From NCBI GenBank assembly GCA_013265495.1, contig MU062233.1, forward strand, positions 7,842,554 to 7,906,553: a stretch of 64,000 bases of DNA, in the 5' to 3' direction. A program made the translations under genes and the position numbers. This DNA is from Vicugna vicugna. Its lineage: Eukaryota. Below the pieces are notes generated by a model, which did not search any database, had not been told where the DNA came from, and was given only the letters and a program-made list of their open reading frames with translations. Positions 41,860 to 61,600 of the stretch are shown here, piece after piece. Position 1 is the first letter of the stretch; each line of letters starts with the position of its first letter.

Positions 41860-42813
41860 TGGGCGGGGAGGCTGCTGTGCCCTGGCCTGCGGCTCTAGCC
41901 TGGCCCCCATGGCCCCTGATTCGTTTTTAAGGCTCACTCTCCGGCCGCCTTGCTTCTCCAGTTGAGTCGGGGTGGAGACCATCATCGACAAGTTCCAGAG
42001 CTGCTGGGGGTTTGGACGGCACATTTGTGGTACCCGGCACCACAGCCACGGCCCTGAAGCCGACACCCTTGGGTAGGGCGAGGGTCTTAAACAGGGGCTG
42101 GACTCTCTCTCCTCAGGTTTTGGTCTCCATGCTGTGGCCAGAGAAAATGCAGAGATTCTGTGGCAGCGGGGGGAGAGCGGGGCAGGATTGGCCATATTTG
42201 TAAGAGCACAAAGGCCAGGGCCTGTGTGTGCTTTCCCTTCCTGGCTACCTTGAGTAGCTGTGCAGAGTGAAATAGAGCATTTCTTGTATTACAGAGGCTC
42301 ACACAACCATGAGGCGTTATGGAGATTACTGTCACTGCTGCCAAGAGGGACATGTATCATTCCAGGCTCTTGGTTACACATGCTGAGAACTGGTTTAGAA
42401 AACAAAACATCTCTGGCAACTTACAGAGCTGGCAAGTCAGCTTGGTTGGGCTTCCCCAGGACTGCCGTGTCTGCTCCACTCAGGCCAGAGAGGAAGCCAG
42501 TTCGGGCTGGTGGCCTTGCGTCTGCAGGCCTAGCTCTGCTCCGGGGAGCAGACTCACAGGCCATGACGGCCATCACTCCTGTCCTCCTCACCCAGGGACT
42601 CAAAGGGCTGCTGCCTGTCTCATGGTAGGGGTGTCCAGACCTGGGGCCAGAGGAGCCAAGGAAAGAGGCCAGTGATAACTTTGTGACTTCAGCAAGCTGT
42701 GACATTGGTGGGGCCTGTCTTCTAACAGGGAACTGTCTATTCCAGAAGTTGGTCCTGAGGGGCCTGGTAGCTGAGTCTCCTGGTCCCCTCAAGGGTGTCC
42801 TCACTTGCAGCCC

Positions 42814-45800
42814 TCAGGTTTGGTGCCACAGGGTTTTTGCTTCGGGGCCCAACCTGTTGGGAAAATAGGGAGGTGGAGTGAATTTAGGGCATAGCTGCTC
42901 CAGAATCTTCTAGTACTGGTGCCCTAAGCCTCCCTTGGAAAACCGCACCTGCTCCTACCATTGATGTGGGATGAGGACGCTGGGAGCTGAGAGGCACAAG
43001 TGGCCGTTACATGTGGGATGGATGGGAGATGATTGGGTCTCATGACCCCACTCACTGCATGTGTCTGCCCCGGGCATGTGGCTAGACTCTGAGCAGAATG
43101 AATGGCAGCCCTGATAACCTTAGAAGCCACTGTATCCAGGACAAGGCCTGTTCACGGAACAGCACATCATCTGAATCATAAATCGGAGCCTGTGGTCCTG
43201 CAGGAGCAGGTGGACAGTTACACCAGAGACCACAGCTGTAGCTGCGACCCGTTTTGATGTGAGTGCTCCCTCAGGTACGGGCCCGTGTGTGTGTCTCTGC
43301 GCACATCGGTGTCTGTATGTCTGTTGTGCGTGTGTGCCTCGGTGACATCCACTCCCGGCCTGTCTGGGACAGTAAGGCTCCCTTCCCCCTTGGAGCAGGG
43401 ACCTGGTCCTTGGACTGGGGAAAGCACAGGAGGATGGAGGCAAGGGTGCAAGAGGGGTCTAGCTGTCCTGTCAGCAGTGCCCCATCTTGAAGAGGAAGGA
43501 GTGGAGGAGGCCGAGGAGGGAGGTGTGTGGGGCCCCGGGCAGACTTCCTGGCATGTGCCCTTACCGTGGTCTGGCCTGGGTGGGACAGCCGCTAGGAGCC
43601 TGGTGCACTTTCCTTTACGGGGCCAGCCACCTGCGGGAGCTCCTCGGGCTGCAGGTGGCTGTCAGTGCACACGGGCATCTCCTTCAGTGAGGAGGGCAGG
43701 GGACAGCCATGGAATCTGTGGGGAAAGGGAGCCTCAGGGTCCGGACTCCGTTGCCTCTGCTGAGAGTCGGGGTGGAGGTTGGCCCCACACCGTCCAGCGT
43801 AGGTCTGGGTCCTGGGACCTTGGGCTTAGGAGGGCAGAGTCTGTGCCTGTCGTGGGGGCTCAGGACTCCCACCCACACACCCGGGTGCCCTACCTGAGCG
43901 GAGCGGCCGTGCTGGGGCCCCTTGCAGCAGCTTGCTCAGCCGGGAAGCCCAGGGGTCCGGCTCGAAGTTCTGGGCTCAGACTAGGGGCTGCAGAGCAAAG
44001 AAGAACACAGTCATCCTGGGCTGTATGCTCAGCTGCAGCCTCCCTGCCACGGCCTCAGTGTTCATGTCCTCCTCAACCTCATATGTTGAAATCCTAACCC
44101 CAAGGTGATGGTATTAGGAGGAGAGGCCTTCAGGAGGTGATCTGGTCCTGAGGGTGGAGCCCTTATAAAAGAGACCTCAGAGAGCAGCCTCCCCCCTTCC
44201 ACCCTGCAAGGACACAGCAAGAAGGCGACATCTGCAGCCTGCAGGAGGGCACTTACCAGACACCCAGCCTGCTGGCGCCTTGTCCTTGGACTTCTCAACG
44301 TCCAGAACTGTGAGAAATAAACATCTGTGGTCCTTAACCTACCCAGCCTGTGGTCTACTTGTTGCCTCAGCCCAAACAGACTAAGAGGCACCCAGAGGCA
44401 CACACCAAGCCTCGCCCCCGATGAGGGGTGCAGCCCAGGCGGGGCACACAGGGCAGGCTCCCCCAGTGCACCCGGCCTCCTGGGAGACGGAATGCTGATG
44501 GTCCCGGAAAGGCTTAGCCTGGAGGAGATTCTAAAGAAACTCGGTTCCCTTTGGGATTCTGGAAGGACAGCCTCAGGGAGCTCCCGGGGGAACAGACTGA
44601 CGCATAGAGCCAGCAACCCAGAGGGACTCCTGGGTGGGGCCCCTGAACACTCTCCACTTGGAGCCTGTCAGACCACAATGACAAGGGGCTTTTGGTCTAG
44701 GGGGTGCTGGGGTGCGTTCTGTTTCCCTCCTGGTAGAACTGGGCTTGGCTACTGTCTACAAGATACCCCAAGGGAGGTGCATTCAGAGCTGTTTTAAGAC
44801 TAGAAGGTTAGAAAAGGCCTCAGCCAGACAGAGCAGAGCCTGGGGAAGCCCACAAGGATCCTTGAAGGAAGGTCTCAGGGGAGTCAGGCTCCAAAATGGG
44901 TGAAACAGAACTAGGAGGCAGCCAGGGGGTCGAGCCTGGCCCCACCTCTGCTACTAATTAGCTTTGTGATCTTTAGTTAGTTGCTTACCCCCTCTGAGCC
45001 TTAAATTGAGAAAAGACAAGTCCTGTTTACCTCTCAGACTATAGAAGTACCAGATACGAAACTTCTGAGGATGCGTTAAACACCAGCAGCTTGGGGCCCA
45101 GGGAATCAAAGCCCCCTGCGCCCCCCCAGGCTTCCCCTGGAGCCTACCTGCCATGCTGCTCAGGGCGTGATGCTGGCTTTCAGCCTGCCCTTCAGATGGT
45201 GCTGCAAACAGGGTCTCCATCCCAGACAGCCTGCCACCCAGACAGCCATAGGTCAAAGCCTGCCTCCCAGGCAGAGGACCCTGCCTCCAGCCCCTTCAGC
45301 TGCTCTGGGGAGGCCATGCCAGCTGAGTTAGCATGTCTGGGGGCCAGCATCTCTCTCCTGACTCGGCCCTCACCTTAAGGAGGTGTCTTTTCCATCATAG
45401 TGGTCCCTTGGCCTCTCACACTGGGCTTCTGTGAGGTCAAAGGAGGCTGTGGAAGCCACGTTCTGAGGAGAGATGAGAGGCAGGGGTTACCACGGCCATC
45501 CCTGCTTTCCCCTGTGGGGCCTCTGTCCTGTGCCCGTCCGCCCACTGCCTGGTACCTCTGCCACCGCCCTCTCATCCCAGGACAGGCTCCGGCAGCTGTC
45601 CCCCAAGGCCCCATGGCAGCTGTGCCGGCGGCTCAAGCTGGGCTGTGGAGAGAAGGCGGTGAGGCCACACCAGCCTTGTCAAAGCCTGTGTCTGCAGAGG
45701 CTCCCAGGGCAGGTGCTAGGCTGGACCAAGGAGCCCACGGGGAAGCGGGAGCCAAGGAGCGACTTCCAGGGAACCCAGGAGGAGGAAGGGGGCCCACCCC

Positions 45801-46252
45801 GTCCTGGGTGAGGGCAGAAGCTGTGAAGTGGCCCCAGGGAGCCAGACTGTTGTGGCGGGGAGCGTGTCCACCACAACGCCAGGGCGCCAGGCCCTGTGCC
45901 TTCCGAGGCCTCCAGCGGTCCTGTGGAGGGAGCTGCAGCAGAAGGAATCTCTGGGCACTTACCTTCCTCCCCCGCGGCAGGAGCTGCTACTTAAGCTCCT
46001 CCGAAGATCCCTCCGTGGTGGGGGTACCCTTTGCATCCTTACCCCTACGGCCCCGGCTGCGCGCTCCAGGGAGACAGTGGTGGCCAAGGTTATGTGCGGC
46101 CCAACAGGGATGTCTGGCTGCAGGTCCCTTGTCCCAGCCAGCTGTGCTCCAGGCCACCAGCTTCCTGAGAAACTCTGCTGGAGGGAGGCTGGCCCACTGC
46201 CAACTCTCTCGGGCTGCAGCCCCTTCACCTGTTGCAGCAGCTTCTGGTCCAT
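42814..46252 (-). pseudogene. SPTBN5: Disrupted C-terminal linker / PH-domain segment of SPTBN5 (degenerate exons; stop in ancestral frame)
   Basis: Exon-equivalents: 46118-46252 (no GT after ...RDLQ), 45963-46037 (DAKGTPTTEGSSEELK*QLLPRGRK, TAG at 45987-45989), 45556-45642, 45374-45462, 45148-45230, 43894-43987, 42814-42853 (TGA). They are homologous to the recalled human DAKGTPTMEGSLEFKQHLLPGGRQ...AAPSEEQAESWWRAL region. The type 'pseudogene' refers only to this segment. Confidence 0.7.
44045..44386 (+). mobile_element. MaLR solo LTR (MLT1/MST-like)
   Basis: Diagnostic segments CATATGTTGAAATCCTAACCCCCAAGGTGATGGTATTAGG, CCTTGGACTTCTC..CCAGAACTGTGAGAAATAAA and CAGCCCAAACAGACTAAGA. Confidence 0.8.
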
Positions 46253-46607
46253 CTTGGGGAGAGGAGAAGGGGGGCAGGTCAGGGTTCCCGTGGGCTCTGT
46301 GTCCCAGCCCCTCCTCCCCACGGCGCTCCCACCCAGAGGGAGCCCCTGCCTCCTCGTTTTTCAGCTCTTCCTGCTTTGGCTCAAGAGACTTCCCTCTCGT
46401 CCCAGGCCACAGGGCGCCCTAGCTCACCAGGAGGTGGGGGTGACAGGACACCGTAGCTGGCAAGGGAAGAGCAGCGCTCTCCTGAAGGGTCAGGTGCGGG
46501 CTCAGTGCCTGCGGATAAGCCAACTCTCGGGCTAAGACCAGGATCGCTGCCACCATTGGTCCCCAGGCCCCTGCCTCCTAGGACACCCAGCTTCTGCTCA
46601 CCCTCAC

Positions 46608-49600
46608 CTTCCTCTGAAGCTGGGCAAACCTCTCTTCCTGGGCAGCCAGCAGCTTTTCAAAGTCCTGGTGTCTGCAGAGCAGCAACTCCACGTCTGCCAC
46701 TGAGTGCTGGGGAGAAGGCAGCCAGGGTGAGGCCCGGCTCCTGGGGGCACAGAGAGCCTTCCCCTCACCCTCCACAGCCTGGCCCAGGGGTCAGTGAGCA
46801 GAGGAGCCATGGGATCCGCCCTTGGTTGTGGCTGTCAGTGCAGCTGGCTAAGGGGCAGGGCCCCAGCTCACCCCGAAGTTGGGGTCCAGCAGGAGGCCCT
46901 CCCGGGAGGCCAGCCAGGCCTCGGCCTGATCCATCCCCTGCCACAGCTTCCGCAGATGCCAGCTCTCCTCACAGCGTCCCTGGCGCAGGACCCAGGCCTC
47001 CTCGAGCGCCTGCAGCCGCCCTTCCAGCTCCTGCAGACACTGGGTCACCTGGTGGGAGGGCGCCGTGGGTGGGATGCTCAGCCAGAGCGCCCGTTAGGGC
47101 GGGGCTAGAGTGCCCAGGAGAGGTGTCGGGGAAGACCCTGAGGCCTGGACCGTCCTCTTCTCTGCCCTCTCTCCCCACCTCTTTCCTGGCTTTCCCCTTC
47201 TGCTGGGGGTTCTGAAGCCCTGGGTAACTGGGCTCTGTGCCCAGCTCAGCCCCAGACTCATCTCAGTGCTCATACTTCCAAGGACATGAAGTGGCTATTG
47301 TCCACCAGCTGCTGCCCTTCCTGCCGTACATTCTGGGCTTGAAGGCAGTGCTCCTTGATGTCTCGCCCCAGCTCCTCATGCTGCTCCAGGAGCTGCTCAG
47401 CTCTAGTCACATCCCCAGCCAGCTCCTCTGAAGACACCATCACCTGCTTCTCCTGAGCCCATGCTCTGTGGGCAGGGAGTGGAAGCTGCTGTCAGGGCCA
47501 GGAGCCCTGTGGGGTGGGGAGGGGGGTGGAGCAGGGCAGGAGCTGCACAAGGGGCTGAGGACTGTAGCTCCCCAGAGAGCTGGGGTGACCCTGCAGGGGA
47601 GAGCTAAGCCAACAGCCGGGGAGGACCCACTTACAGCAGTTCCCGACAGCGTCCGAGGAAGGCGTGGCCCTGGGCAGCCTGCTCCAGCTGCTGACCCCGC
47701 TCCTGGGCCTTCACATTCAGGCTGGCCCAGGCTTTCTGCACCTCAGCCAGCTGCTTGGCCAGGCCCTCCTGAGCCTCGGGGTGTAGCTGGCCCAGCCGGC
47801 AGGCCTCAGTTGGCACCTGTGCCACCTCCTTCTCCACGGCTGTCAGTTCCCTCTGCCGCCAGAACACATGATCAGGCCTCACCCCCCGGCACCTGATGCC
47901 TGCTCCTCTTCAGGGAGCACCCAGTCCCTCTGGGGAGCTGGTTCTGCTTCCAGACTGCTCCACAACCTGGGAGGCAGGCCCTCCCGTCCCCCCGCCTTCA
48001 GGGAGGGGCTGAGACGGGCAGGCCGTGGCATGTGGATCCTCACCTCCAGGCATCTGTGCTGTTGCTGCAGGGTCTGTACCGACGACAGGCTGTGGCCACA
48101 GGCATCTCCTGCCATCAGGCTGGCCTTCTCCTGCATCCAGCCCCGGAGCTCGGCTGCCACCTGCTCAAAGCCGCGGACCTCCCGGGCTGCAGCCAGGTTC
48201 TGGGAGAGAAGGGAGGGCCTGCTCTGGCCACGGTCCTCTCTTCCTGGAGACATGGCCTCCTGGGCTACCTCCTTTTATTTTTTCCTTATTTTTCAAAATT
48301 GTTTACTTATTTTTAAATTAAAGTATAGTTGGTGTACAATATTATATAGGTTATAGGTGTACAATGTAGTAGTTTACAATTTATAAAGGTTATACTCCAT
48401 TTATACTTATTATAAAATATTGGCTATTTCTCAGTGTTGTGCAGTATATACTTGTAGCTTATTTTGTACCTAATAGTTTGTACCTCTCAGTCCCTCACCC
48501 GTGTCTTGCCCCTCTCCCCTTCCCTCTCCCCCTGGTAACCAACAAGTCCACGGGGATTGGTGACTCTTCCATGAGCACCAGGTGCAGAAAATGTCCTAGA
48601 TGTGGCAGCCACTCAGTGAATGTGTGATGTTGCTGATGACACGTGGTGGGGCCCCAGGGGACATTCTGTGAGGAGAGGGTCTTCAGTGCATACTTATGAG
48701 GAAGGCAGAGGTGGAGACTCGGAAGCAGGCGGGAATGGGTCCATGTGAGGGAGGAAGTTGGTTTGGGGGATCTGGTTGAGGAGAAGAGGGTCTGCTCAGG
48801 AGGCTGCCCAGTCAGGACTCTCAGAGACAGCCTCCCTGGGCTGCAGGCTCTGGCAGGGGCTCAGGGATCTGGGCTGCTTTTCTAGAAACAGCTCTCGCTG
48901 AGAGCTAAGGTGATAGGGGAACACTGAGGATTTCCTTGGCGTACAGATCCACTCAGAGCATGAGGATGAGACCTCACCCAGTGAGCTTGTGTGGTGAAGG
49001 AGACACCAAAGAGGCATGTGTCTTAATGAAACTGAAGCCTGCTTCAGTTTAGCTGGGGGTTTAGAGGGGGTCAGATGTTGGCCAGACATGCTCTTTCTCC
49101 CTGGAGGTGTCAACTGCACAAGGAGGAAACCAAGTTGGTACAAAGACTCAGAGGGGGCTGGAGGTGGAAGATTTTGAGCCTCTTGATCTGCTTGGCACTG
49201 GGAGTTAGAGGCAGACACCTCCCTCCACTCACCCACCCACACCCAAACCCAACTGAACTGGTGGGTCTGCTGTCCCTGGCCCAGACAGAAGGCACAGATG
49301 TCCCCACCCCTCGGCTGCCCCTGGTCTGGTCTGGAGGCACCCACCTGTGTGCGGGCTTTCAGTGCCCTGTCCAGCCTCTCCCAAGTGGCCTCAACGCGGC
49401 TCCGGTGCACTTGAATCTGGGGAGAGCACCTGGGGGCTGCTCGTTCCAAGGAGCCTGCCCGCTCCCGCAAGGCCTGCACCCTGGCCTGCCCCAGGCTCTG
49501 GACTTCCTTTCTGAAAGCATCAAACTTCTGTTCCAGCACCTGCAGGGTGTAGGGCCAGGGAGGGTCACTCTGGAGGTGTGGTATCCTGCAGCTCCCAACG

Positions 49601-52600
49601 CTGACGAAGGGCTTGGCAGAATCGGCCACTTTTGACGTCCTGAGGCTCTGCCTCAAGAACTGCAGGGATCTGCCCAGAGGCCCCCACTTCCCATCTGCTC
49701 CCCCCTCACCCTCCCTCTTTGCCCTTGTGATCCACTGTCCTCCAGGTTCACTCAGGAGTGACTCACCTTGACGGCCTCCAGGTCCTGCCCATAGTCCTGG
49801 GACTCAGCAGAGGCCACTTTGCTGGCCAGCCAGGCGTCCAGGAGCAGGGCTTCCCGCTCCAGTTGGTGGAGCTGCAGCTGCTCCCGCAGGCCTTGCCCCC
49901 TGCACTCCGCTCTCTGCAGCAGCCCCGAGTGGGCCTCCCTCACTGCGCGCATCTGGGCAAGCACCTTAGGGCTGCGGCAGGAAGGACAACCCATTAGAGC
50001 GCTTCCTCTCCAGGCTAGATCAGCCTTCTGCCTCTGTAGGGACGGGAGGGGCCCTGCCTCTCCTCCCTATTTGGTCCTGGCAACGACCCACCTTTCTGAG
50101 TTCGGCCTGCTCTCAAGGAGGGCAGCTCTCTGCTGCAGCCTCTCGATGCGAGGACTGAATGCCTCCAACTCTCTCCTGGTGGTGTCCAGCCTCCGCAGAA
50201 AGGCTTGAGTGGCCTCGGCACTCTGGCCCATCTCCTCCGTGTCCAGGACACAGCCCTGCTCTTCCAGCCAGGATTCTGCCTCCAGGAGCTGGGGTGACAA
50301 AGGGGACAGTTTTCCCTGGGTGATACCCTCCAGGGCTCTCAACTTTGAGTTCATGACCTTGAGATTTAGAGCAGTGAGTGGTTCTCAGCCTGGCTGACTG
50401 GGATCACCTGAGAGCCTCAACAACTCCCTATGCCTGGCTCTCCCCCCATAAGATTCTGATCTGGTCTGGAAGGGAGCCTGGGTAGCAATCAGCATTTCTC
50501 CAGGGTTCCAGGTAATTCTCACGTAAAGCATTGACTAAGAATCACTGGTTTAGAAGAAACAGCAAAGCAAAACCAACCCAAATCCGGGGGGCTGTTTTCT
50601 GGGAAACAAGCTGAAGGAAACGACTCAGTGGGGGTGACAGAAAACACACAGAGAGCCTGGAGCCCCAGCCGGGGGTTACCCTCCAGGCCTGCCTACACCT
50701 TGGGTGTTCTCCTGCCCGGCCCCACCTCACCCCTCACCTCTGTCAGGAACTGCTGGGCCTCCTGAGCCTCCTGCAGCCTCCGCCGCCTCTGTGCAGCCTC
50801 TGCCCGCAGGCGGCCCACGGCATCCTCCAGCTGCTGCACCCGGGCAGCCACGTCGCGGGCGGCAAAGTGCCCAGCCTGCACCAGCTTGCGCCCTGTGCCC
50901 AGCACCGCCTGGGTCAGAGCCTCGTGGCTGCTCATCTCACTCTCCAGGTTCTGCAGAGACAGGACCGGGGATGCTCCTGGGTGCTCCTCAGGGGACCCAG
51001 AGCTGTGTTTGAAACCTCGTGGGATCCCACAGACGCCCCCAAAGAGAACCTTGTCCTTGTGACCAGCAAAGAATCTAAGGCCCCAAAAGCCTTTTGGAGG
51101 CAGGAAGCTCCCAGCACCAGTGGTGGATGGAGGATGGCCCCACCCTTCCTAACGGGCCCACACCTGGTGCTTCTCCTGCAGGTGCCGCACGGTGCTCAGG
51201 CTCTGGCCGCAGTCTCGTGAGGCAGCCAGGGGCAGCTTCTCCCGCACCCAGGCCAGCTCCTCATCAGCGTCCCTGAAGAACTGCAGGAGGAGGCTCCGGG
51301 CCTCCAGGGCTGTCCTGCGCTCCCGCAGGGGCTCCCTCAGGCCCTCGAACCTGCAGCAGTGGAGGGCGGGACCAGGGTGGGGGACCCTGGTCGTCACTAT
51401 GATGGCCAGACTCTGACCCACCCTGTGCCCCTCATCATGGGCTGGCTGGGGGAGGCCCTGGGGAGATGAGTGAGGGGCAGGGAGGAGGGATGGATCTACC
51501 TCTGAAGCAGCCGCTGGAACTGCTCTTCCAAGTCTTGGGTGAGGCTGGGGCTTTCCCGCACAAAGGCCTGGGCCTGGCCCAGCAGGGCCTGTGCCCGACC
51601 AACCTGCCTGTCCACTGCTGCCTCCAGCTCTCCCTGTGCCCCTAGGAGCTCGTCCAGCCCAGGCTGGTCCAGGCCCCCGATGGGGGCCCTCAGCTTGACC
51701 TCCACGGGCTCCAGCCAGCTCTCCAGTTCCTCCACACTCCGCCGCAGACGCTGGGCCTGAGGCAGAATGTGAGGTGGGGGCATGCAGGGGAGAGGCCTAG
51801 AGCTGCATCTAGCCTGCTCTGTAGCCCACAACCTCACCTCACAGGTCTCCTGTAGCTTGACTGCCTTCCTCTGGCAGTTGGCCTGCAGCTCCTCCCAAAG
51901 CTTTCTCAGCTCCTGCAGGTGCTCCTGGATGGTCTCTGAGGCCGGGTGGCCTTCCTGCAGCAGCCTCTGCCCCTCCTATAGTCACAACATGGCACACACC
52001 TCATGGAGTCAGGACTGCTGGTATCAGGGCCCTTGTGTTGGCTCCAACTATCAGCCCCATGGCTGCAGTCTGTGTGCTAGCTGTGTGATTCTCAGGCAAG
52101 TTCCTTAACCTCTCTGAGCTCATTTTTCTTAGCCACATAATGGAGACAATAGTGGTTATTTTGTTTAAACGAGAGAAAACATTTCAAATACTTATATTAG
52201 ACTGAGGGGGCCTGGAGTCAGGGCCTACCCTTTGTAGGTGGAAGAGGGTAAATAAAAAAGGTGCTGTACTTTGACTCCTGCACCCACAGGACTTCTGGCT
52301 GGGCCCTGACTCTCCTCTGATGTCTTTCCAAGAGAGTTTTCAAAACCATCACATCAAAACACTATCTTTGAAATTCTTGAAAAGGCACCATTTTTGGAGA
52401 GGGTACCCCAGGGAAGCCTCTGTGACTCACTACCCTTTGGTGCTTAGTACAGCGTCTGTATACAGAAAGCATTCACTGAGACTTCGCCATCCACTGAGAC
52501 TTCGCCATCCACTGCTGTGGTTCAGAGCCAGTTGCCAGGGCTCTGTGGGGTTGCCCTGCTCTGGCCAGTAAGCCTGGCCCGGGCCCCCAGGGCCTCACCG

Positions 52601-55600
52601 TCTGCAGCCTTTGTTGGTGGTGTACACCCGCATCCAGCTCGGCCTGGAGATTCTGCTGCTTCCGCCACTGTGCCTGCAGCCCGGCTGGGTCCCGCCAGCC
52701 CTCTTCCAGGGCCACCAGGTTCTTCTCCCTCAGCCATGTGGCCACCTGGGCACACAGGGAGGACCAGGCTCTGCTGCCTAGGGTGCTTGTCCACCTCACC
52801 TCTGGGCTGCCCCGGGGAAGGGTGGCTTTTTCCTGGGGCAACTCCTTCCCCACCAAGCACAACCACTCCCCACTCCAACCAAGGAGAACCTCGTAGAAAT
52901 CCTGCAGGAAAGCCTGCAGCTGCCTGAGCTCCTCCAGCTGGCGGTGACGGGTCCTGGCTCGCTCCAGGAGTGCCTCTTTCCTGCCGGAAGGAGGGTGTCA
53001 GGGGCCTCAGGTCTTTTCACTGGGACCTGGAGCTGCTACGGGGATGAGTGTGCACACATACACACATGCGTGCACATGCGTGCCCTTCCAGCCCTTCTTG
53101 TGGATCAATATACCCTGAGTCTGGGCTTTCCTTTGTTTCTTTAATTTTTTTTTTTTAGGTGGGGGGAGGTAATTGGGTTTACTTATTTCGAGGAGTTACT
53201 GGGGGTTGAACCCAGGACCTCACGCAAGACCATGCATGCTAAGCATACGCTCTACCGCTTGATCTATACCCCACCCCTGGGCTTTCCTTTGAAATAGAGA
53301 CACACCCTACTTCCCCTCTTCATTAGTGCCTGTTATGGGCTGAATTGTGTCCCCGCAGATTCTTAGGTTGAAGTCCGAATCCTCAGTATGTCAGAATGTG
53401 ACTGTTTTTGAAGATAAGGTCTTTAAAGAAGTAATTAAGTTAAAATGAGGTCATTAGGTTGGGCCCTAATCTGATACAAAGGGTGTCCTTATAAGAAGGG
53501 ATAAGCACACAGGCACACACACACAGGGACAGACCGTGTGAAGGCAAGGAGTGAGGCCTCAGGAGAAACCAGCGCTGCTGACATCTTGATCTTGGGATTT
53601 CTAGCCTCCAGAATTATGAGAAATAAACTTCTCTTGTTTAAGCCACCCAGTCTGCGATATTTTGTTATGGCAGCCCTAGCAAACTAATTCAGTGTCTACA
53701 TCACTTTTTTGATCAGACACTGCTATTAGTGCGACTTCGTTGGGATGTATTTGTAAGTGTGCGTGTGTGTATATTTGTACTGATTTATATATGTGTGTAC
53801 TTCTGTACAAATATAGTAAGTCCATTGCCATATGCGCAAAAATAGACATCAGAAGTGAGATCTATTAAAGAGGAAAAGAAGTTCTAACACCCCTCACCCT
53901 CACCCCACCAGGGTGCACACACACCTCCCACCAGTGTAGCCCCGACGCTGGCGTTAGTGGGAATGCTTGTGTCCTCCTGCTGGGGCTGCCAAAGGGGGCT
54001 GGGGGCAGGGGAGATGCAGAGTCTTGATGGAATGAAAATGGCTTCAGAGGATGCCAGGAGCCTGAGAGGGAGGGGGTAGGGTGGCACTGTCCTGGGGGGC
54101 AGCCAGGTCTGCCAGGAACTACCTAAGGGGACTAGGGGGAGGGAGTGTTGACAGAGACCAGCACACCAACGTTTGCCATCTGTCAGTCAAAGACCTCAGG
54201 TAGCCAGGTGGGGTCCACCTGCAGGGAAGAGGAGGGGGTGGCCTCCAGGGCTCCAGCACAGGAGCCACAAGCATTGTGGGCCTTGGTGGGCTCTCTGGGA
54301 AGGAGGGAGACCCCTGCCAATCTGAGATCTGGCTTTTGGCCAAATATGCCTTGGTCTGAGGGGCTGGACGGGGCAGCTGAACCAGATGGGATTTTACGAG
54401 GGAAAAAGGCAGAGCTCATAGCTACGCCAGCTTCAGTTACATGAGCATAAGAAATCTGCCAAGTGACTGTCAGGCACTGCGTCAGGACATCAAGGGTCCC
54501 TTTCCCATCCTCACCACAACCCTAAGAGGCAGGTACTGTTACCCCCTCATGGTAGACATGAGACTCCATGAGAAATTTGCCACAAGTCCCACCATGGGTG
54601 GGCAGCACAGAAACTCAGCTGTCTAACGACTGTGCTCTGGTATCGCCATCCCATGAGGTCATCTCTCTCTCAGTTTCTCACTATATGCTGCTCTGTAAAA
54701 GTCCCTTTTATCTTAGCTGGGTGACCATGTGCTGTGTGACTCAGCAGGCTGACACACTGCAGGGCCAGGAGTGGTGGGGTCCTGGCATCCAACCTCAGCA
54801 CCCGGAAAATGCTGGGAGCCCAGGCTAACAGGCAGAAGAGCCGGGCAAGAGCCAGACATTCGTGCCAGCCCACCCACCACCCCTTAGCCCCAGAGCCGCT
54901 GTACCTCAGGAGCATGGCCTGGCACCGGCCCAGGGCGCCCTGGGCCTCGGGCTGTCCACCCTGGAGCAGGCTGCGGGTGGCGGCCTCCAGCGCGCTGATC
55001 TTGTCGGCCCGTGCCTCCAGCTCCCGTTCGTGCATCTTGTGCTTCCACAGCAGGGTCTCCACGTTGGCCGGGGAGTCCTGGGGATTGATGCTGTCCACAG
55101 GGCTGCCCCTCCTCCTCCCAAGCTATCTGCTTTCCCACCTAAACCATCTGATCAAACACATCCCCCGAATCCCTCCAGGCCGTATCTGGCTTTAGGGCAG
55201 TGATTCTCAACCAAGCATGGGTCAAGAGTCAGAATTTCCAGAGCAGGTGGAGCTTCTCCACATAACAGGGACACCCCCTCCTCTGCACTCCCAGTAAGGC
55301 TATGTCAGCACAGGGCGAGTCAGCCCTGATTATTCTCTGAGCGCCCTCATGGGTCAGGCCCTCCTGCCACAGAGCTTGGGACGGTGGTGGGAAAAACAAA
55401 CATCTGGGTGTAAGGAAGTAAGAAGGGCAGAGGTGAGAAGCATGTTGGGAAGGAGGCAAGAATGTGTCCAGGGCCACACACTCACCCTCCAAGCTCCCAC
55501 GGCACCTCCTGGTGCACAACCGTCACCAGTGATGGATGGGTAAGCAACTGCTTGTGGTTGAGGGCTGGGAGATGCCCTTGGCCTGGGAGCTCAGGCAGCA

Positions 55601-58600
55601 CTGTCTGCCTTGATCTCTAATGCTGCTCTTGCAAACCCTCCCTCACTCTTGCTGGGCACCTACCCCTAGACCCTCACTGGCTGGGCAGTCTTCCTGGCTG
55701 CAGAGCCAATGTTCCATCTGCTCCACAGAGCTCAGAACTAGCTGTTGAAAAAGAAAAGGAAAAAGGCAAGAGGAAGTGAGCAGAGGGTTCAGGGAGAGTG
55801 AGCCTGTTGGGGTTCCCAGTGGGGAAACCAGGCTGCTGGGGCCTGGCTTAACAGAACGAGCCCACAGCAGGAAGACTTGCAGCGCACGAGCTGAGTGGTG
55901 CGTGGTAGGTGGTGGGAAAAGCCCCTGGTACAGCAGTCTCTCTGGCTTTGGCTTTGACCAGGGGCAGTGGGTTTAGCATAGGCCTCACGGGTGGAGTTGG
56001 GATGAAGGCTGCCTACCTGCAGCTCCAAAGCCTGCTGCAGCTGGAGCTGGTGCTCCTGCCAGGCCCGTTCCAGGCTGTTCAGCTCCTGGTCTAAACCAGC
56101 CAGGGCCTGGCGGATGTCGGGGGTGGCTGGGTGCCCGGTGGCAAGCAGTTGCTGCCCGGTGCTTCGGGCCAGGCTGATGCTGTCTGTTCGGGAGTCCAGC
56201 TCGGCCTGTAAGAGGACTGGGCTCAGATCCCAGAGGCTGAGGCTCCCTGAGTGGGAGGGAAGAGGCCCAGTGGGAAGGAGGAGAGGTGGGGAAGACAGCT
56301 GAGGGGGTTAGGGTGGAAGAGGTGAAAGGCAGAGGCAGCTGATACAGAAAGAACCCAAGAGAAAATTGGGATCACAGCAAAGGGGAGGCCAGGGAGGACG
56401 TGAGATCCCAAGAAAGGCCCCGGGGCCTGGGCTGTTCACCTTGCACTCCTGCTGTTCCTGCAGCATGTGCTGGACCTCCGCAAGGCTGCGTGGGGTGCTT
56501 CGGGCATCCATGTCAGCTCGCAGCCTCTGGGCCCAGACCAGCAATTCCTGCAGCATTGCCTGCAGCTTCTGAGCTTGGTGCAAGGCATCCAGCGAGTCCT
56601 TCCTGTCCACCAGGGTCATTAGCTAGTCCCAGGGCCTCCGAGCCCCTCTTTCCCCCTGTGCCCACAGGTGCCTTCTCTCCCTGAATCCCTTCAGCCAAAG
56701 AAAGGGCCCATGGGCTGGGAATTAATATGGTGACAATACAGATGGTTATTGGAAGGACAGAGGAAGACTCTTAGGGGCAGTCTGGGGACTGGGCTGCTGC
56801 AGGGGACGGGTCCACGAGGGCAGTGAGGGAAAGAGGCCCCAGGGCTTGTACCGCTTCTGGGCCCTGCTCCGGAGCTGCCACCAGCTGTCCATCATCTCCT
56901 GCTGCTTGAGGCTGAGGCTGTGGGCTGCCCCAGGGCTTCTCTGGCAGAGACGGCCCACCTCACGCTCTAGGGGCTGTGTGGGAAGCTAGGGTCAGGGGCT
57001 GGGGCAGGGAGGCAGGTTGTGCTCAGGGGAGCCCCAGCTGCAGGAGGCCCCAGCCTGTGGTGTGCAGCTGAGTGGATCTGGCTGGCTCTTGAGGTCCTGA
57101 CCCCCACCCTGCCGCCACATGCCTGCCCAGGGTCCCACAGCGGAGGTCCCCTGGGCCCGGGCCCACCTCCGCACCCAGCTGCACACCTCCACTTGTTCCT
57201 GGATGAGGCCCATTTCCTGCTCCACCTGCTTGTGTTTCCACATCAGCCTCTGCACACCATCCAGATGTTTCCCGTAGTCCAGGGTCTGGACCAGGGTGGC
57301 CTGGAGAGGAATGGGGTGTTACCAGTGGCCTTTGCTTCAGCTCCTCCCTCATGGCAGATGGGTCACTGGCAACAGGGTTTCTGTGTGGGAAGCAAGCGCC
57401 CAGCCTGATTCCCTTCTCAGTGTCCTCCGTGGGCTGGAGCAGGACGCTGACCCTGACCAGAGGGCCCTTCCTTTTGTGAAGGGGGAAGATTCCCAGGAGG
57501 GACTTGAGCTGGAGTTAGTACCCTCCACCGGTGGTGCCTCCACATGCATTGTCTCACTTGCTCTCGTTCCTCTGCGAGGACTGTGCACGGACTGGCCTGG
57601 CTGAGGCAGGAACCAGAGGGGCGGTAGGAACAGCTGGCAAGAGCCCTTGCGTGCCCAGAACAGGGCACCACCTGCTTCCTGGGGGGCTTCTCAGGCTGCA
57701 GACCACTCTTCCACTCCGGCCTCTGCCAGCACCTAGGCCATGTTTCTCTGTGGCTGCTGACACAATCCCCGGGCAAACCTCCTGTGGGTTCTGGCCTTGC
57801 TCAGGGACAACAGAGGAAACAGTATGTGGTGGGGGGTCCTCTGGCCTCCGGACACAGTGCTTCTGAGGGAGAAAGGAGCCAGGTGGGCCAGCCTCCGAGC
57901 ATGCAATGGGGGCTTCTAGGTCCAGAGTTGACCCCGAGAGCTCCTGGAAGACCCCCTGATGGCCCCCTGGCGGGACGTGCCTCCCAGTACCCAGCTGAAG
58001 AGGAGAGGCGGATGAGGGGAGAGATGCAGAGACTCAGGCGGCACTGGCTCCCGGGCTGAACCGGCTTTTCCATCGCTTACCTTCTCCCTAATCAGCTCAG
58101 TGATGTCACCTAGCTTTTGGGACAATGCATGTATCTCCAGAGCTCCTTCAAGCTGCTGCTGGTACCGGAGCAGGTTGCCATGGAAACTGTTCCACCTGGC
58201 AGAGAGGGTGTAAGGCTGAGTCTGAGGTGGCCCTCCAGCCCGTCTCCAGCCCCGTCTCCAGCCCCTCTGCTTCCGGCTCAGAGACTGGCCTGCTGTTGAG
58301 CTGGTGTCGCCGCTGGCAGATGGTCTTGACTTGCTCGGGGTCCCGGTTCTTGAGCTGTAGTGACAAGTCGTTGATAATCCTGATGCGGGCGTCATCCACC
58401 GTGTCCTGTGGGGGGTGCAGGGTGAGGGCATTGGCAGCACCCACTCTGAGACCCTTCTCTGCACTGCAGTCAGCACTTGGAGGGTTTGCTTGGTCCCAGA
58501 AGAGCATGAGGAATAACATGTCTGGGGAGTGGAGGCAGCTGCTGCTTCAGCTGTGGACAGCCCACCCCATGCCGGGTGCAGTGAGGAAGATCCACTTGGG

Positions 58601-61600
58601 GATTGTAGCCCCAGGGCTGTCTCTAAGGCTGGAAAAAATGCTCCCCAGGTCAGGACCAGGCAGGAGGGAGAAGGCAGGCATGCACAGAGGAACAGAAGCT
58701 TTCAAAGTTGTAATGAAGCTTCTCAGGATAAGAAAAGCAAAGAATGTGTAGAAGGAAATGGTGAGTGCCAGCCCCCTGGGGTTTGGGTGTCCCCACCCCT
58801 GGGAGTCACCGGGCCTCGGCTGCCACTGCTTAGACACTGGGTGGGGCTCCTGGGTACATGGGGAGGGGGTCTGTGGCACTGGGTGGGATGGCAGGCATCC
58901 TTCCGCTGTAAAAGCATCTTGCATTGGTCTGCGTTTTCACAGCACTTCCCAATAGGTGTCTCAGACGGGGTGGGCAGGGAAGGGGGTTGCTCTCTCTTAC
59001 AGAAGCCAGAGCAGAGCTCAGAGGCTAACATGGTGAACTTATGGCACAGGCAGGACTCAAGCCCAGCTCCTCAAGTGTATCTAATGCTCTTCTTACTACG
59101 GCATCTGGCACAGTGGCTGCGAAATTCCACCATTAGCAAAGGCTATCTTAGATCAGAGCATTGCAGCTTTTAAAAAGTCATACATACTTACCTCAGGGGG
59201 TGAAGTTGGCGTGTTTAGGCTCTAACATTTGATTCTGAAACATTTACCCAATTTCTTTCCTCTATACCTTATAAGGAAAATAGATTTTTGGATTGTGTGT
59301 CTGGGGTAGGGGGGTGAGCAGGTGCTGAGGTGCTGAACGAGCAGCTGCAGTTTTTTGATTGTCCACTACGCCCAGACGTGTGTGTTCCTTATTTTAAAAT
59401 TTTGAAATAATTGCAGATGCACATGAAATTGCAAAAGTAGTACAGAGAAGTCCCATGTCGCCTTCACCCAGCTACCCACGATGGTTAACATCCTATGTAA
59501 CTGCAGTACAATATGAAAACCAGGACACTGACTTCAGTACAAATGTTAACTAAACTACAGACTTCATTCAGACTTCATCAGTTTCTACATGCACACATCT
59601 GTGTGTGTGGGTGGCATAGTTCTAGGCAGTTTTATTATATATACAGATTCGTGTAACCACCACCATCACACATACAGGCTCCCTTACCTATGAGGTAAGC
59701 AGTAGCCCCATTTTAAAGATGAAGAAACTGAGGCTCAGAGAGGTGAGGGCACCTGCCTAAGCATGTGCAGGTTGTAAGCGCAAAGCCAACACGAGAGTTC
59801 ACATCTGGCCCCAAAGCCCGTGCTCAGTCACTGCTCTGAGCTGCATTTCCCAATGCGGGGATGCACTGGCCTACCTCTCCCCAGCGGGGCCCCCTTACCC
59901 CGGCCCAGACTCCTGGCAACTTGTGGAGCTGCCTGCGGAGCTGCAGGCAGTGCTCAAGGTCCTGGCCCAGGTCGCCGATGTCCACCGTCACCTCCTGTGG
60001 AGGCCAAGTGTCTGGAAGGCTGCACTCTGAGCATCCGGGCCCAGGTGCACCCAGCCCTCAGGCACCCAGCTGCTGGGGCAGTGTAGGGGCAGGTGGAGGC
60101 TTTGGGAACTTCTTGCTGGGGCTCCCTCCTATCAGGCAGGGAGCTGCAGGCCTGGGGCTCCCTCCCCAACCTGTCAGCCCCACAGCCCCACCCTGGCTCT
60201 GTCCTTGTTCAGCTGGGTCTCACCATCTCCTGGATCCAGGCCTCTGCACCATCTACTCTCTGCAGGAATTCCAAGAAGTTCCGCTTGTCCTCTAGGTCCC
60301 GGCCCCGGAGAGCCACCGTCTGTCTCAGCTTCTCCCAGTGCTCCTGCAACTCCCGCAGCTTCTGGGAGACCTCTCCCGCCCAAGGGTGGCTTTGTGCTAG
60401 GAGAGCCTCGCCCTCCTGGGAAGAGAGGGGACACTAAGAGATCTTGCCTGTCACCCTTTCTCTTGCTTGCTTTTTCTCCCTCACAGGCTCCCAGGCCCCN
60501 NNNNNNNNNNNNNNNNNNNNNNNNNNNNNNNNNNNNNNNNNNNNNNNNNNNNNNNNNNNNNNNNNNNNCCGCCTCAGACCTTTCCCTTTGGCCTTCCTAG
60601 AGTCTTCCCTCTGGGGCAGGGTGGGGCTAAGGGCCTGGCTGTTACCTTGGCAACAGAGGTTATGACCTCTTCATGGGCCTGGACCTCAGCCTCAAAGGCC
60701 TGGTGTTTCGGCAGGTGCCTCAAGTTATCTTTCAAGTCCCCAGGAGGGACTGGCTCTTTTAGCCACTGGATTCGCTCCTGGATCCAGTCCTCAGCCTGGC
60801 AGGGGTGGGGACATGAATCTCATGATGCTGATGCTGCCTCAGTTCAGAGACATCCCCCACGCCTGCCCTCAGCCATGCCCAGGTAGCTGACTGCTGGGCT
60901 GGGCAGTGTCCGGTAAATGAGATTCAATGGTTTGAGCCCAGGAAGACACCCCCAGGCCCAGCTGGTCCCCCAGCCACAGGAAAGGGCTGAGCAGGGACCT
61001 TGGGTGGGATCTCATTTTGGAGGTACAGCTTGTCTGTCCTAGGTTCCTAGACTGCTCTGCTCCCCCTCAGCACCTATGTTCTGGCTCTTCAAGAGCTTAG
61101 GAAGCAGAGGGGTCTCCACACACAGGGTCTTCAAATCAAATGTTCTGGGCTCCAGTATGGCCTCTGGGAAAGTCATTTAACTCTCCAAACTTCAGTGTCC
61201 TTATCACAGGGCTGTGGTGAGGCCTGAATGAGCCCTTGAAGGTGAACATCATTTGCAAACTGTAAAATGTGCCCAGGTGGAAGGCACTGGGCTGGGGTGG
61301 CCGTCTGACCTGGGTGGTGGCCCTGGTGAAGGCAGCCATCAGCAGGGAGGTGTGCAGGGTGTGTCCCCGGATCTCCGCCAGCTTCTTCACCATAGCCCGG
61401 TGCTCCAGCACTGTGTGGAGCATGTCCTGCGTCCTGGGGCCCCCGAGCATCTTTGCCTGCTCACACAGAGCTGCCTCCTGTGGGCAGGGTGGTGGGACGG
61501 GGGACACAGCCCACTGTTTACCATATAGGGGAGGCTGGAGCAGGGGCTGGCCCTGAGGAAAGCCCTGCCCTCAGCCCTGCGTGACCTAGGGCTGCCCAGT

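What the first reader, a model, noticed from the sequence alone, without database searches (positions are those of the whole stretch)
42814..46706. SPTBN5: intact spectrin rod but a decaying C-terminal PH module (possible lineage-specific domain loss)
Seen: 30 rod exons (4629 nt, 1543 codons) carry no stop or frameshift. Within about 1.1 kb of the tail (45148-46252) there is a missing donor, an in-frame TAG, three 3-nt indels relative to the recalled human sequence, and loss of both hallmark Trp residues. Established: the beta-spectrin PH domain binds phosphoinositides, and beta-V spectrin works in hair cells and photoreceptors as a cargo/motor adaptor. Inference: selection is relaxed on the PH domain only, giving a PH-less or PH-degenerate beta-V spectrin in this (probably camelid) lineage. 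An alternative is recent whole-gene pseudogenisation whose first hits fell in the tail.
Basis: partly seen in the sequence, partly recalled or inferred. Interest (0 to 1): 0.8.

Follow-up and report, generated by a model that had tools for sequence, protein, structure and literature searches.

The report
Camelid beta-V spectrin with broken PH domain
This is the 3' half of a camelid SPTBN5 (beta-V spectrin) gene whose long rod is kept intact but whose C-terminal lipid-binding (PH) module was disabled long ago; similar PH decay is seen in most placental mammals, so it is an ordinary lineage example rather than a camelid peculiarity.

Summary
All are shared with Camelus ferus (about 3% neutral divergence), so they are old and not assembly errors.

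A deletion of about 140-155 bp removed the intron before the first PH exon and left 5 nt (GTAAG). That exon is now fused out of frame. The surviving GTAAGG donor most likely splices past it in frame, as in both NCBI Camelus models.

The rod (1542 codons) has no indel or stop. About 11.6 indels and 5.7 stops would be expected under neutrality, and dN/dS is about 0.5-0.57. The gene is therefore not a pseudogene.

PH decay is not specific to camelids. Hippo and cattle killed a different PH exon. Pfam finds no PH domain in most placental orders, and the literature already describes mouse Spnb5 as lacking a bona fide PH domain. The last two PH exons still evolve under rod-like constraint.

No RNA evidence was obtained, because the single read-laying run failed. 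Interest is modest.

The parts
46608..62761 (-). 29 complete SPTBN5 spectrin-repeat (rod) exons, 1542 codons, with an open reading frame
   Evidence: Codon-level alignment to C. ferus P0060 residues 1427-2968 shows no gaps or stops. dN/dS is 0.565. There are 0 indels against 11.6 expected.
46428..46508 (-). 81-nt in-frame candidate cassette exon, included in both Camelus RefSeq models
   Evidence: Acceptor PWM score is 5.3 (9th percentile) and donor score 8.2. The stretch is not in frame in hippo or rhino.
46043..46252 (-). Exon B in its artiodactyl-extended form (210 nt, 70 codons), ending ...AAGAVG at the donor GGG|GTAAGG
   Evidence: The donor scores 9.0, the 49th percentile of 275 real SPTBN5 donors.
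46112..46120 (-). Position of the primate/carnivore-type donor of exon B. It reads CAG|CCAGAC here, so there is no GT.
   Evidence: PWM score is -9.7. Hippo (CCACGTGTCC) and cattle (CCATCTGTCC) models do not use this site either.
46038..46042 (-). GTAAG: all that remains of the 144-159-nt intron between exon B and exon C. This is the deletion junction, flanked by AGGA microhomology.
   Evidence: Five-species genomic alignment. The junction is identical in C. ferus.
45963..46037 (-). Relic of the first PH exon (exon C, strand beta-1). It is fused out of frame to exon B, carries TAG at 45989-45987 and a 3-nt insertion, and keeps the donor GTAAGT.
   Evidence: As an acceptor the fused junction scores -5.1. 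Both Camelus gene models skip it.
45556..45642 (-). PH exon D (87 nt), PSLSRRHSCHGALGDSCRSLSWDERAVAE. The first signature Trp is replaced by Arg (CGG, 45627-45625).
   Evidence: The acceptor scores 14.8, the 91st percentile.
45374..45462 (-). PH exon E (89 nt), with one codon deleted relative to other mammals (KHTFSLR becomes KDTSLR)
45148..45230 (-). PH exon F (83 nt), holding the C-terminal helix. The signature Trp is replaced by Gln (CAG, 45175-45173; Arg in C. ferus). A one-codon deletion is shared with hippo and cattle.
43592..44308 (-). Post-PH tail exons G (44308-44258), H (43988-43893) and I (43714-43616, open to the stop). A TAG at 43594-43592 replaces the CAC found in other mammals.
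   Evidence: The stop is shared with C. ferus. Two 1-nt indels between the two camelids lie just after it.
42804..42851 (-). Terminal coding piece used by the NCBI Camelus models (WA.KQKPCGTKPEG.K), read in a different frame from the last exon of ruminants

Best explanation
The window holds the 3' half of a functional SPTBN5 (beta-V spectrin) gene. The animal is a camelid other than Camelus, probably a South American one.

Before the Camelus/non-Camelus split, a microhomology-flanked deletion of about 140-155 bp removed the intron in front of the first PH exon (exon C). Only GTAAG is left. Exon C can no longer be spliced as its own exon. Reading through it shifts the frame and ends in a premature stop in exon D.

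The junction still forms a normal donor (GGG|GTAAGG). This donor most likely joins the strong acceptor of exon D, which skips exon C in frame. The TAG and the 3-nt insertion in exon C are then changes in what has become intron.

The encoded protein keeps its rod but has no PH fold. Strand beta-1 is gone, both signature Trp residues are replaced, and two codons are deleted. A further shared stop shortens the far C-terminus.

This is one local route in a general erosion of the beta-V PH domain in placental mammals. Other lineages removed other PH exons. The last two PH exons (E and F) persist under rod-like purifying selection, as a conserved tail peptide of unknown role.

Shown here: the lesions, their sharing with Camelus, the frame conservation of the rod, and the state in other mammals. 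Inferred: the splicing pattern and the loss of lipid binding.
For: - Lesions and their sharing with C. ferus.
- Intron deletion: hippo has a 144-nt intron and cattle a 159-nt one, against 5 nt in camelids.
- Splice scores from 275 introns of the same gene: donor 9.0 (49th percentile), exon D acceptor 14.8 (91st percentile), fused exon C acceptor -5.1.
- Both NCBI Camelus models join ...AAGAVG to PSLSRRHSC. The C. bactrianus model is full length (3823 aa) and is not flagged low quality.
- Rod frame: 0 indels against 11.6 expected (P about 9e-6) and 0 stops against 5.7 expected (P about 0.003).
- Rod dN/dS: 0.565 pairwise (bootstrap 0.35-0.93) and 0.50 on the camelid stem (0.35-0.71).
- The 5' part of C. 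ferus is intact at the level of tblastn matches.
- No Pfam PH hit on the window's pieces or on the camel tail.
- Generality: and the mouse statement in bioRxiv 10.1101/2021.02.01.427491.
- E-F constraint: dN/dS 0.31-0.43 against 0.31-0.41 for the rod.
Against: - There is no transcript evidence. Exon C skipping therefore rests on splice-site scores and gene models that may themselves be homology-driven.
- Rod constraint in camelids is weak. Exons differ by 2.1% and introns by 2.9%, and dN/dS is 0.5-0.57 against 0.31-0.41 in other pairs. Some general relaxation cannot be excluded.
- Counts for the PH exons are small, and the contrast with the rod is not significant (Fisher p = 0.11).
- The missing PH exons in many other mammals are read from predicted gene models. 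Only hippo and cattle were checked at the DNA level, in one assembly each.
- The 5' half of the gene in the window's own species was not seen.
Confidence: 0.7

Rival explanations
1. One reading: a camelid-specific loss of the PH domain, caused by selection relaxed on that domain only, from an ancestor whose PH domain was working.
For: The TAG, the intron deletion, the Trp-to-Arg change in exon D and the codon deletion in exon E are found only in camelids among the genomes aligned. On the camelid stem the PH exons give dN/dS of about 1.6 against 0.50 for the rod.
Against: Hippo and cattle disabled exon D independently. Pfam finds no PH in most placental lineages. Mouse is already described as lacking a bona fide PH domain. 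The downstream donor and the exon F deletion are shared across artiodactyls. The stem contrast is not significant (p = 0.11). After the split the PH exons give dN/dS of 0.24.
Confidence: 0.2
2. The whole gene is a pseudogene, or is becoming one, and the first hits happened to fall in the tail.
For: Rod dN/dS is fairly high (0.5-0.57). The exon substitution rate is close to the intron rate. No SPTBN5 protein from a non-Camelus camelid turned up in the protein searches. Spnb5 knockout mice are viable with normal outer hair cell function.
Against: The lesions are at least as old as the split from Camelus. Even so, 1542 rod codons show no indel (11.6 expected) and no stop (5.7 expected) between the two lineages. 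The bootstrap upper bounds of dN/dS are below 1. Camelus has a full-length 3823-aa model. The 5' exons of C. ferus are open. RNA runs hold 12-21% of the sampled words of the tail stretches searched.
Confidence: 0.06
3. The lesions are assembly or sequencing errors.
For: None was found.
Against: Identical lesions are present in an independent assembly of another genus. The tail sequence is held at 0.92-1.00 of the sampled words by 14 DNA runs from several samples and studies.
Confidence: 0.01

Closest known systems
Human and anthropoid primate SPTBN5 (beta-V spectrin; Stabach and Morrow 2000, as cited in PMC9248767)
   Same: It is the orthologue, with the same rod exon structure. The PH-coding part is split into the same four exons (C 72, D 87, E 93, F 84 nt in colobus). 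In the camel locus the PLA2G4-type neighbour lies downstream.
   Different: The primate tail scores as a PH domain (PF00169, 34-41 bits) and keeps both Trp residues. Camelids have lost exon C, both Trp residues and two codons, and give no Pfam PH hit.
Mouse Spnb5 (bioRxiv 10.1101/2021.02.01.427491)
   Same: It is described as lacking a bona fide PH domain while the rest of the protein is kept. Expression is low. The knockout is viable with normal outer hair cell function.
   Different: The mouse lesions were not examined here. The gerbil model ends early inside the PH region, which is a different route from the camelid intron deletion.
Hippo and ruminant SPTBN5
   Same: These artiodactyl orthologues use the same extended exon B donor and share the exon F codon deletion. 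Pfam detects no PH domain in them.
   Different: They keep exon C and its intron but have lost exon D. In hippo the donor changed from GT to GA. In cattle the acceptor changed from AG to GG, there is a 4-nt deletion and the donor is deleted. Ruminants keep the C-helix Trp.
Canonical beta-spectrin PH domains (Pfam PH_9 PF15410; beta-I/II spectrin, Drosophila beta-H)
   Same: Exons D-F are recognisably homologous to strands beta-2 to beta-7 and the C-terminal helix in the alignment with ostrich and turtle beta-V.
   Different: Sauropsid beta-V scores 45 bits on PF00169 and 33 on PH_9, while the camelid tail scores nothing. From my own knowledge, not tested here: the inositol-phosphate contacts of the spectrin PH domain include the Arg-Ser-Trp of strand beta-2, which reads SRSW in ostrich, SSPW in rhino and SRRH in camelids.

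Membership tests
SPTBN5 / beta-V (heavy) spectrin orthologue | Long run of spectrin repeats, collinear with annotated SPTBN5 proteins | tested here: met
   tblastn of C. ferus SPTBN5 gives 35 collinear matches at 85-100% identity. All 38 exon blocks map without gaps. The best full-length matches of a rod exon are SPTBN5 proteins. Pfam Spectrin is found in the orthologues.
SPTBN5 / beta-V (heavy) spectrin orthologue | N-terminal tandem CH (actin-binding) domains | not testable with these tools
   The 5' half lies outside the window. In Camelus the CH-bearing 5' exons are present and open.
PH domain (Pfam PF00169 / PH_9 PF15410) | Profile match at or above the gathering score | tested here: not met
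   No PH hit at E up to 10 on ten open frames covering window 44957-46418, nor on the C. ferus tail. Positive controls: rhino 46.4 bits, ostrich 45, colobus 41.2.
PH domain (Pfam PF00169 / PH_9 PF15410) | All coding exons of the seven-strand sandwich present in frame, including strand beta-1 in exon C | tested here: not met
   Exon C is fused to exon B with 5 extra nt, carries a TAG, and has no usable acceptor. Its absence from the mRNA is inferred, not observed.
PH domain (Pfam PF00169 / PH_9 PF15410) | Near-invariant Trp in the C-terminal helix | tested here: not met
   The window has CAG (Gln) at 45175-45173 and C. ferus has CGG (Arg). TGG is kept in rhino, primates, ruminants and ostrich.
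PH domain (Pfam PF00169 / PH_9 PF15410) | Folded beta-sandwich that binds phosphoinositide | not tested
   Structure prediction was not run. An alignment made of true PH domains would thread the remnant onto the fold whatever damage it carries. A binding test needs recombinant protein.
Unitary pseudogene | Frame-disrupting mutations spread over the gene and dN/dS near 1 | tested here: not met
   There are 0 indels and 0 stops in 1542 rod codons, against 11.6 and 5.7 expected. dN/dS is 0.50-0.57 with upper bounds of 0.71-0.93. Only the 3' half of this species was seen.

The most novel reading that the evidence does not exclude
The PH domain of beta-V spectrin stopped working as a lipid-binding fold early in placental evolution. 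It has since been taken apart exon by exon, independently, in many lineages: exon C in camelids, exon D in hippo and ruminants, and C plus D in the elephant, armadillo and leaf-nosed bat models. The last two exons (E and F) are kept everywhere under the same purifying selection as the rod. That would imply a new role for this remnant that does not depend on a PH fold.
Probability: 0.35. Interest if true: 0.5.

Novelty: new member of a known kind. Interest (0 to 1): 0.3.

Why it matters
Beta-V spectrin is usually drawn with a C-terminal PH domain that anchors it to membranes, and disease and hair-cell or photoreceptor models assume this. The camelid gene, taken with the hippo, cattle and other mammalian tails compared here and the published remark on mouse, suggests that this picture holds for anthropoid primates and a few other lineages but not for most placental mammals. 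In practice:
- gene annotators should not expect an intact PH domain in SPTBN5;
- the TAG should not be used to call the camelid gene a pseudogene;
- functional results on the human PH domain may not carry over to livestock or mouse.

The near-exact intron deletion that turns an exon into intron is a neat but minor example of how a domain can be lost without breaking the reading frame.

Tried and rejected
No read-level or junction evidence was obtained.
- A search with a 216-aa camel tail piece, meant to find transcript-derived protein fragments, gave only bat proteins and a few unnamed fragments at 57-71% identity. None was camelid.
- Pfam on ten raw open frames of the tail found nothing. This says little on its own, because each PH exon is short.
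- The gibbon locus was not on record, so colobus was used as the primate.
- The 2017 PNAS paper on adaptive evolution of spectrin beta-V is not held. It is cited only through bioRxiv 10.1101/388496.
- A literature search for SPTBN5 pseudogene, gene loss or camel found nothing relevant.
- Structure prediction of the remnant was considered and dropped. With an alignment of true PH domains, AlphaFold would model the fold regardless of the lesions. Without an alignment the model would be poor for any species.
- My first estimate of about 195 nt for the deletion was corrected to about 140-155 nt from the mapped hippo and cattle introns.
- The reading 'the missing donor is a camelid lesion' was rejected. 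Hippo and cattle models also ignore that site and use the downstream donor.


Full report
**What the region is.** The minus strand of window 42.8-62.8 kb carries the 3' half of SPTBN5. A rod exon searched against 1.8 billion representative proteins found a 3755-aa fox SPTBN5. A search with that protein's tail returned SPTBN5 from about 120 vertebrates, including Camelus ferus (P0060). P0060 maps onto the window as 35 collinear matches at 85-100% identity. The C. ferus genomic locus (L001) aligns to the tail at 96.5% over 5.6 kb. Introns differ by 2.87%. The window therefore comes from a camelid of another genus, probably a South American one. In the camel locus a PLA2G4-type gene lies downstream on the other strand.

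**Check of the observation.** All items hold.
- Rod: 29 complete exon blocks, 1542 codons, align to C. ferus codon for codon without a gap or a stop.
- TAG: it lies at 45989-45987 in the frame '...TTEGSSEELK*QLLPRGRK' and is followed by a GTAAGT donor. Hippo, cattle and rhino have CAG there.
- Donor: at the place where primate and carnivore models end exon B, the window reads CAG|CCAGAC.
- Indels: exon C is 3 nt longer than in other mammals, and exons E and F are each 3 nt shorter.
- Trp residues: the Trp of strand beta-2 is now Arg (45627-45625). The Trp of the C-terminal helix is now Gln (45175-45173).
- Reality of the lesions: each one is present in C. ferus, and 14 DNA runs from several studies hold 92-100% of the sampled words of the tail. 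They are real and predate the split between the two camelid lineages.

I aligned the genomic tail of the window, C. ferus, hippo (L002), cattle (L003) and rhino (L004). I also mapped the annotated proteins onto their loci.
- In hippo and cattle, exon B runs 78 nt beyond the primate-type site to a strong donor, GGG|GT(G/A)AGG. A 144- or 159-nt intron follows, and then exon C (72 nt).
- Camelids keep that donor, but the intron is reduced to GTAAG (46042-46038).
- The deletion ends lie in AGGA on both sides, which suggests a microhomology-mediated deletion. That is why the junction still reads GTAAGG.
- Exon C is now fused to exon B with 5 extra nucleotides. Read through, the frame shifts, stays open to the exon C donor, and then meets TGA early in exon D. 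Such a transcript would be a substrate for nonsense-mediated decay.

**Likely splicing.** I built position weight matrices from 275 introns of SPTBN5 in five species.
- The GTAAGG donor scores 9.0, the 49th percentile of real donors.
- The exon D acceptor scores 14.8, the 91st percentile.
- The fused 'acceptor' of exon C scores -5.1.
- Splicing 46043->45642 is in frame: exon B is 210 nt and both junctions are in phase 0.
- Both NCBI models, C. ferus XP_032336758.1 and the full-length 3823-aa C. bactrianus XP_074222690.1, use exactly this join...AAGAVG|PSLSRRHSC.

On this reading the TAG sits in DNA that has become intron. Exon C differs at 3 of 75 positions between the two camelids, which is like the introns.

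**Further down the tail.** A second stop, TAG at 43594-43592, replaces the CAC of other mammals and is shared with C. ferus. Two 1-nt indels between the camelids follow it directly, as expected for sequence that is no longer coding. Hippo has its own TGA three codons earlier.

**Is the gene alive?**
- Between the window and C. ferus, introns carry 2.5 indel events per kb, while 5496 nt of exon carry none. For the rod, 11.6 were expected (P about 9e-6).
- About 5.7 new stops were expected in the rod and none is seen (P about 0.003).
- Rod dN/dS (Nei-Gojobori) is 0.565, bootstrap 0.35-0.93.
- On the camelid stem, inferred by parsimony with hippo and cattle as sister and rhino, lion and colobus as outgroups, rod dN/dS is 0.50 (0.35-0.71).
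- Other mammalian pairs give 0.31-0.41. Camelid constraint is therefore weak, but it is present.
- The C. ferus 5' exons are open, and the apparent split of the gene into two models is an annotation artefact. The junction at L007 9787-10039 splices normally.
- RNA runs from reproductive-tract samples hold 12-21% of the sampled words of the two tail stretches searched, which include introns. This is consistent with transcription but does not resolve splicing.

**Is PH decay specific to camelids? No.**
- Hippo's exon D has lost its donor (GT to GA). In cattle the acceptor is GG, there is a 4-nt deletion, and the 3' end with the donor is deleted. Their gene models skip exon D.
- PF00169 bit scores on tails form a gradient: rhino 46.4, ostrich 45, ground squirrel 42.9, colobus 41.2, gibbon 37.7, marmoset 34.1, lion 29.3, fruit bat 27.8, manatee 25.0, elephant seal 24.2, Hipposideros 21.7. 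There is no hit for camel, hippo, cattle, deer, fox, bear, lemur or porcupine. Sloth gives no PF00169 hit, only 13.1 bits on PH_9.
- Precomputed Pfam labels show no PH in pig, peccary, donkey, elephant, aardvark, armadillo, mole, gerbil, platypus and others. Many of those models lack one or two PH exons.
- The C-helix Trp has been lost separately in fox, bear, Hipposideros, hippo, lemur and camelids.
[quoted passage not shown] It reports viable mice with normal outer hair cell function.
- Adaptive change of spectrin beta-V on the mammalian stem, with altered subcellular location, is cited in bioRxiv 10.1101/388496.

**Selection on the PH exons.**
- On the camelid stem, exons D-F show 15 non-synonymous and 3 synonymous changes, dN/dS about 1.6 (0.68-5.5). 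The rod gives 0.50 (Fisher p = 0.11).
- Their non-synonymous rate is 3.6 times that of the rod (binomial p about 1e-4). However, this region has higher dS and dN than the rod in every lineage compared.
- After the split from Camelus the counts are 6 and 7, dN/dS 0.24 (0.05-1.05).
- Between hippo, cattle and rhino, exons E-F give 0.31-0.43, no different from the rod.
- E-F are retained in most of the placental models inspected.
- The C-terminal half of the former PH domain therefore seems to remain a constrained coding piece, although the fold cannot form.

**Verdict.** The gene has a maintained rod and a PH module disabled long ago, but this is one local version of a widespread mammalian trend that has already been noted for mouse. 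The splicing model is inferred, and transcript data are the missing piece.

Noticed in passing
window 46428-46508 (minus strand): An 81-nt in-frame stretch with AG and GT borders is included as an exon in both Camelus RefSeq models (ALSPHLTLQESAALPLPA.VSCHPHLL). Hippo and rhino have indels there that are not multiples of 3, so it may be a camelid-only cassette exon or a prediction artefact.
   Followed up: partly
window 43592-43594 (minus strand): A second stop (TAG, where other mammals have CAC) lies in the read-through of tail exon I and is shared with C. ferus. Two 1-nt indels between the camelids lie just downstream. Hippo has an independent TGA three codons earlier. The far C-terminus has therefore been truncated more than once.
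   Followed up: partly
L002 between 45277 and 45795; L003 between 46799 and 47259: Relics of PH exon D are present. In hippo the reading frame and the Trp survive but the donor is GA instead of GT. In cattle the acceptor is GG, there is a 4-nt deletion, and the exon end with its donor is deleted.
   Followed up: partly
window 51757-51837 (minus strand): An 81-nt intron between two rod exons is stop-free and in frame, so a plain ORF scan reads straight through it (159-aa open frame 51975-51499).
   Followed up: no
L007 9787-10039: The held annotation splits C. ferus SPTBN5 into a 596-aa CH-domain gene and a 3249-aa gene. The intron between them has normal splice sites and the joined reading (..SLARSR|RALLEQ..) matches hippo, so the split is an annotation artefact.
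   Followed up: yes
window 46608-62761: Exons of the rod differ from C. ferus almost as much as introns do (2.1% against 2.9%), with only a weak codon-position bias (37/25/34). Even so, there is not one indel. Selection seems to act mainly on frame and length rather than on residues.
   Followed up: partly
protein searches: No cetacean SPTBN5 protein, and no protein from a non-Camelus camelid, appeared among the hits, although hippo, pig, peccary and many ruminants did. This could reflect pseudogene calls or the limits of the search.
   Followed up: no
window 60500-60568 and 12358-12553: There are two runs of N. The first lies in an SPTBN5 intron and touches no exon. Neither was filled or looked up.
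   Followed up: no
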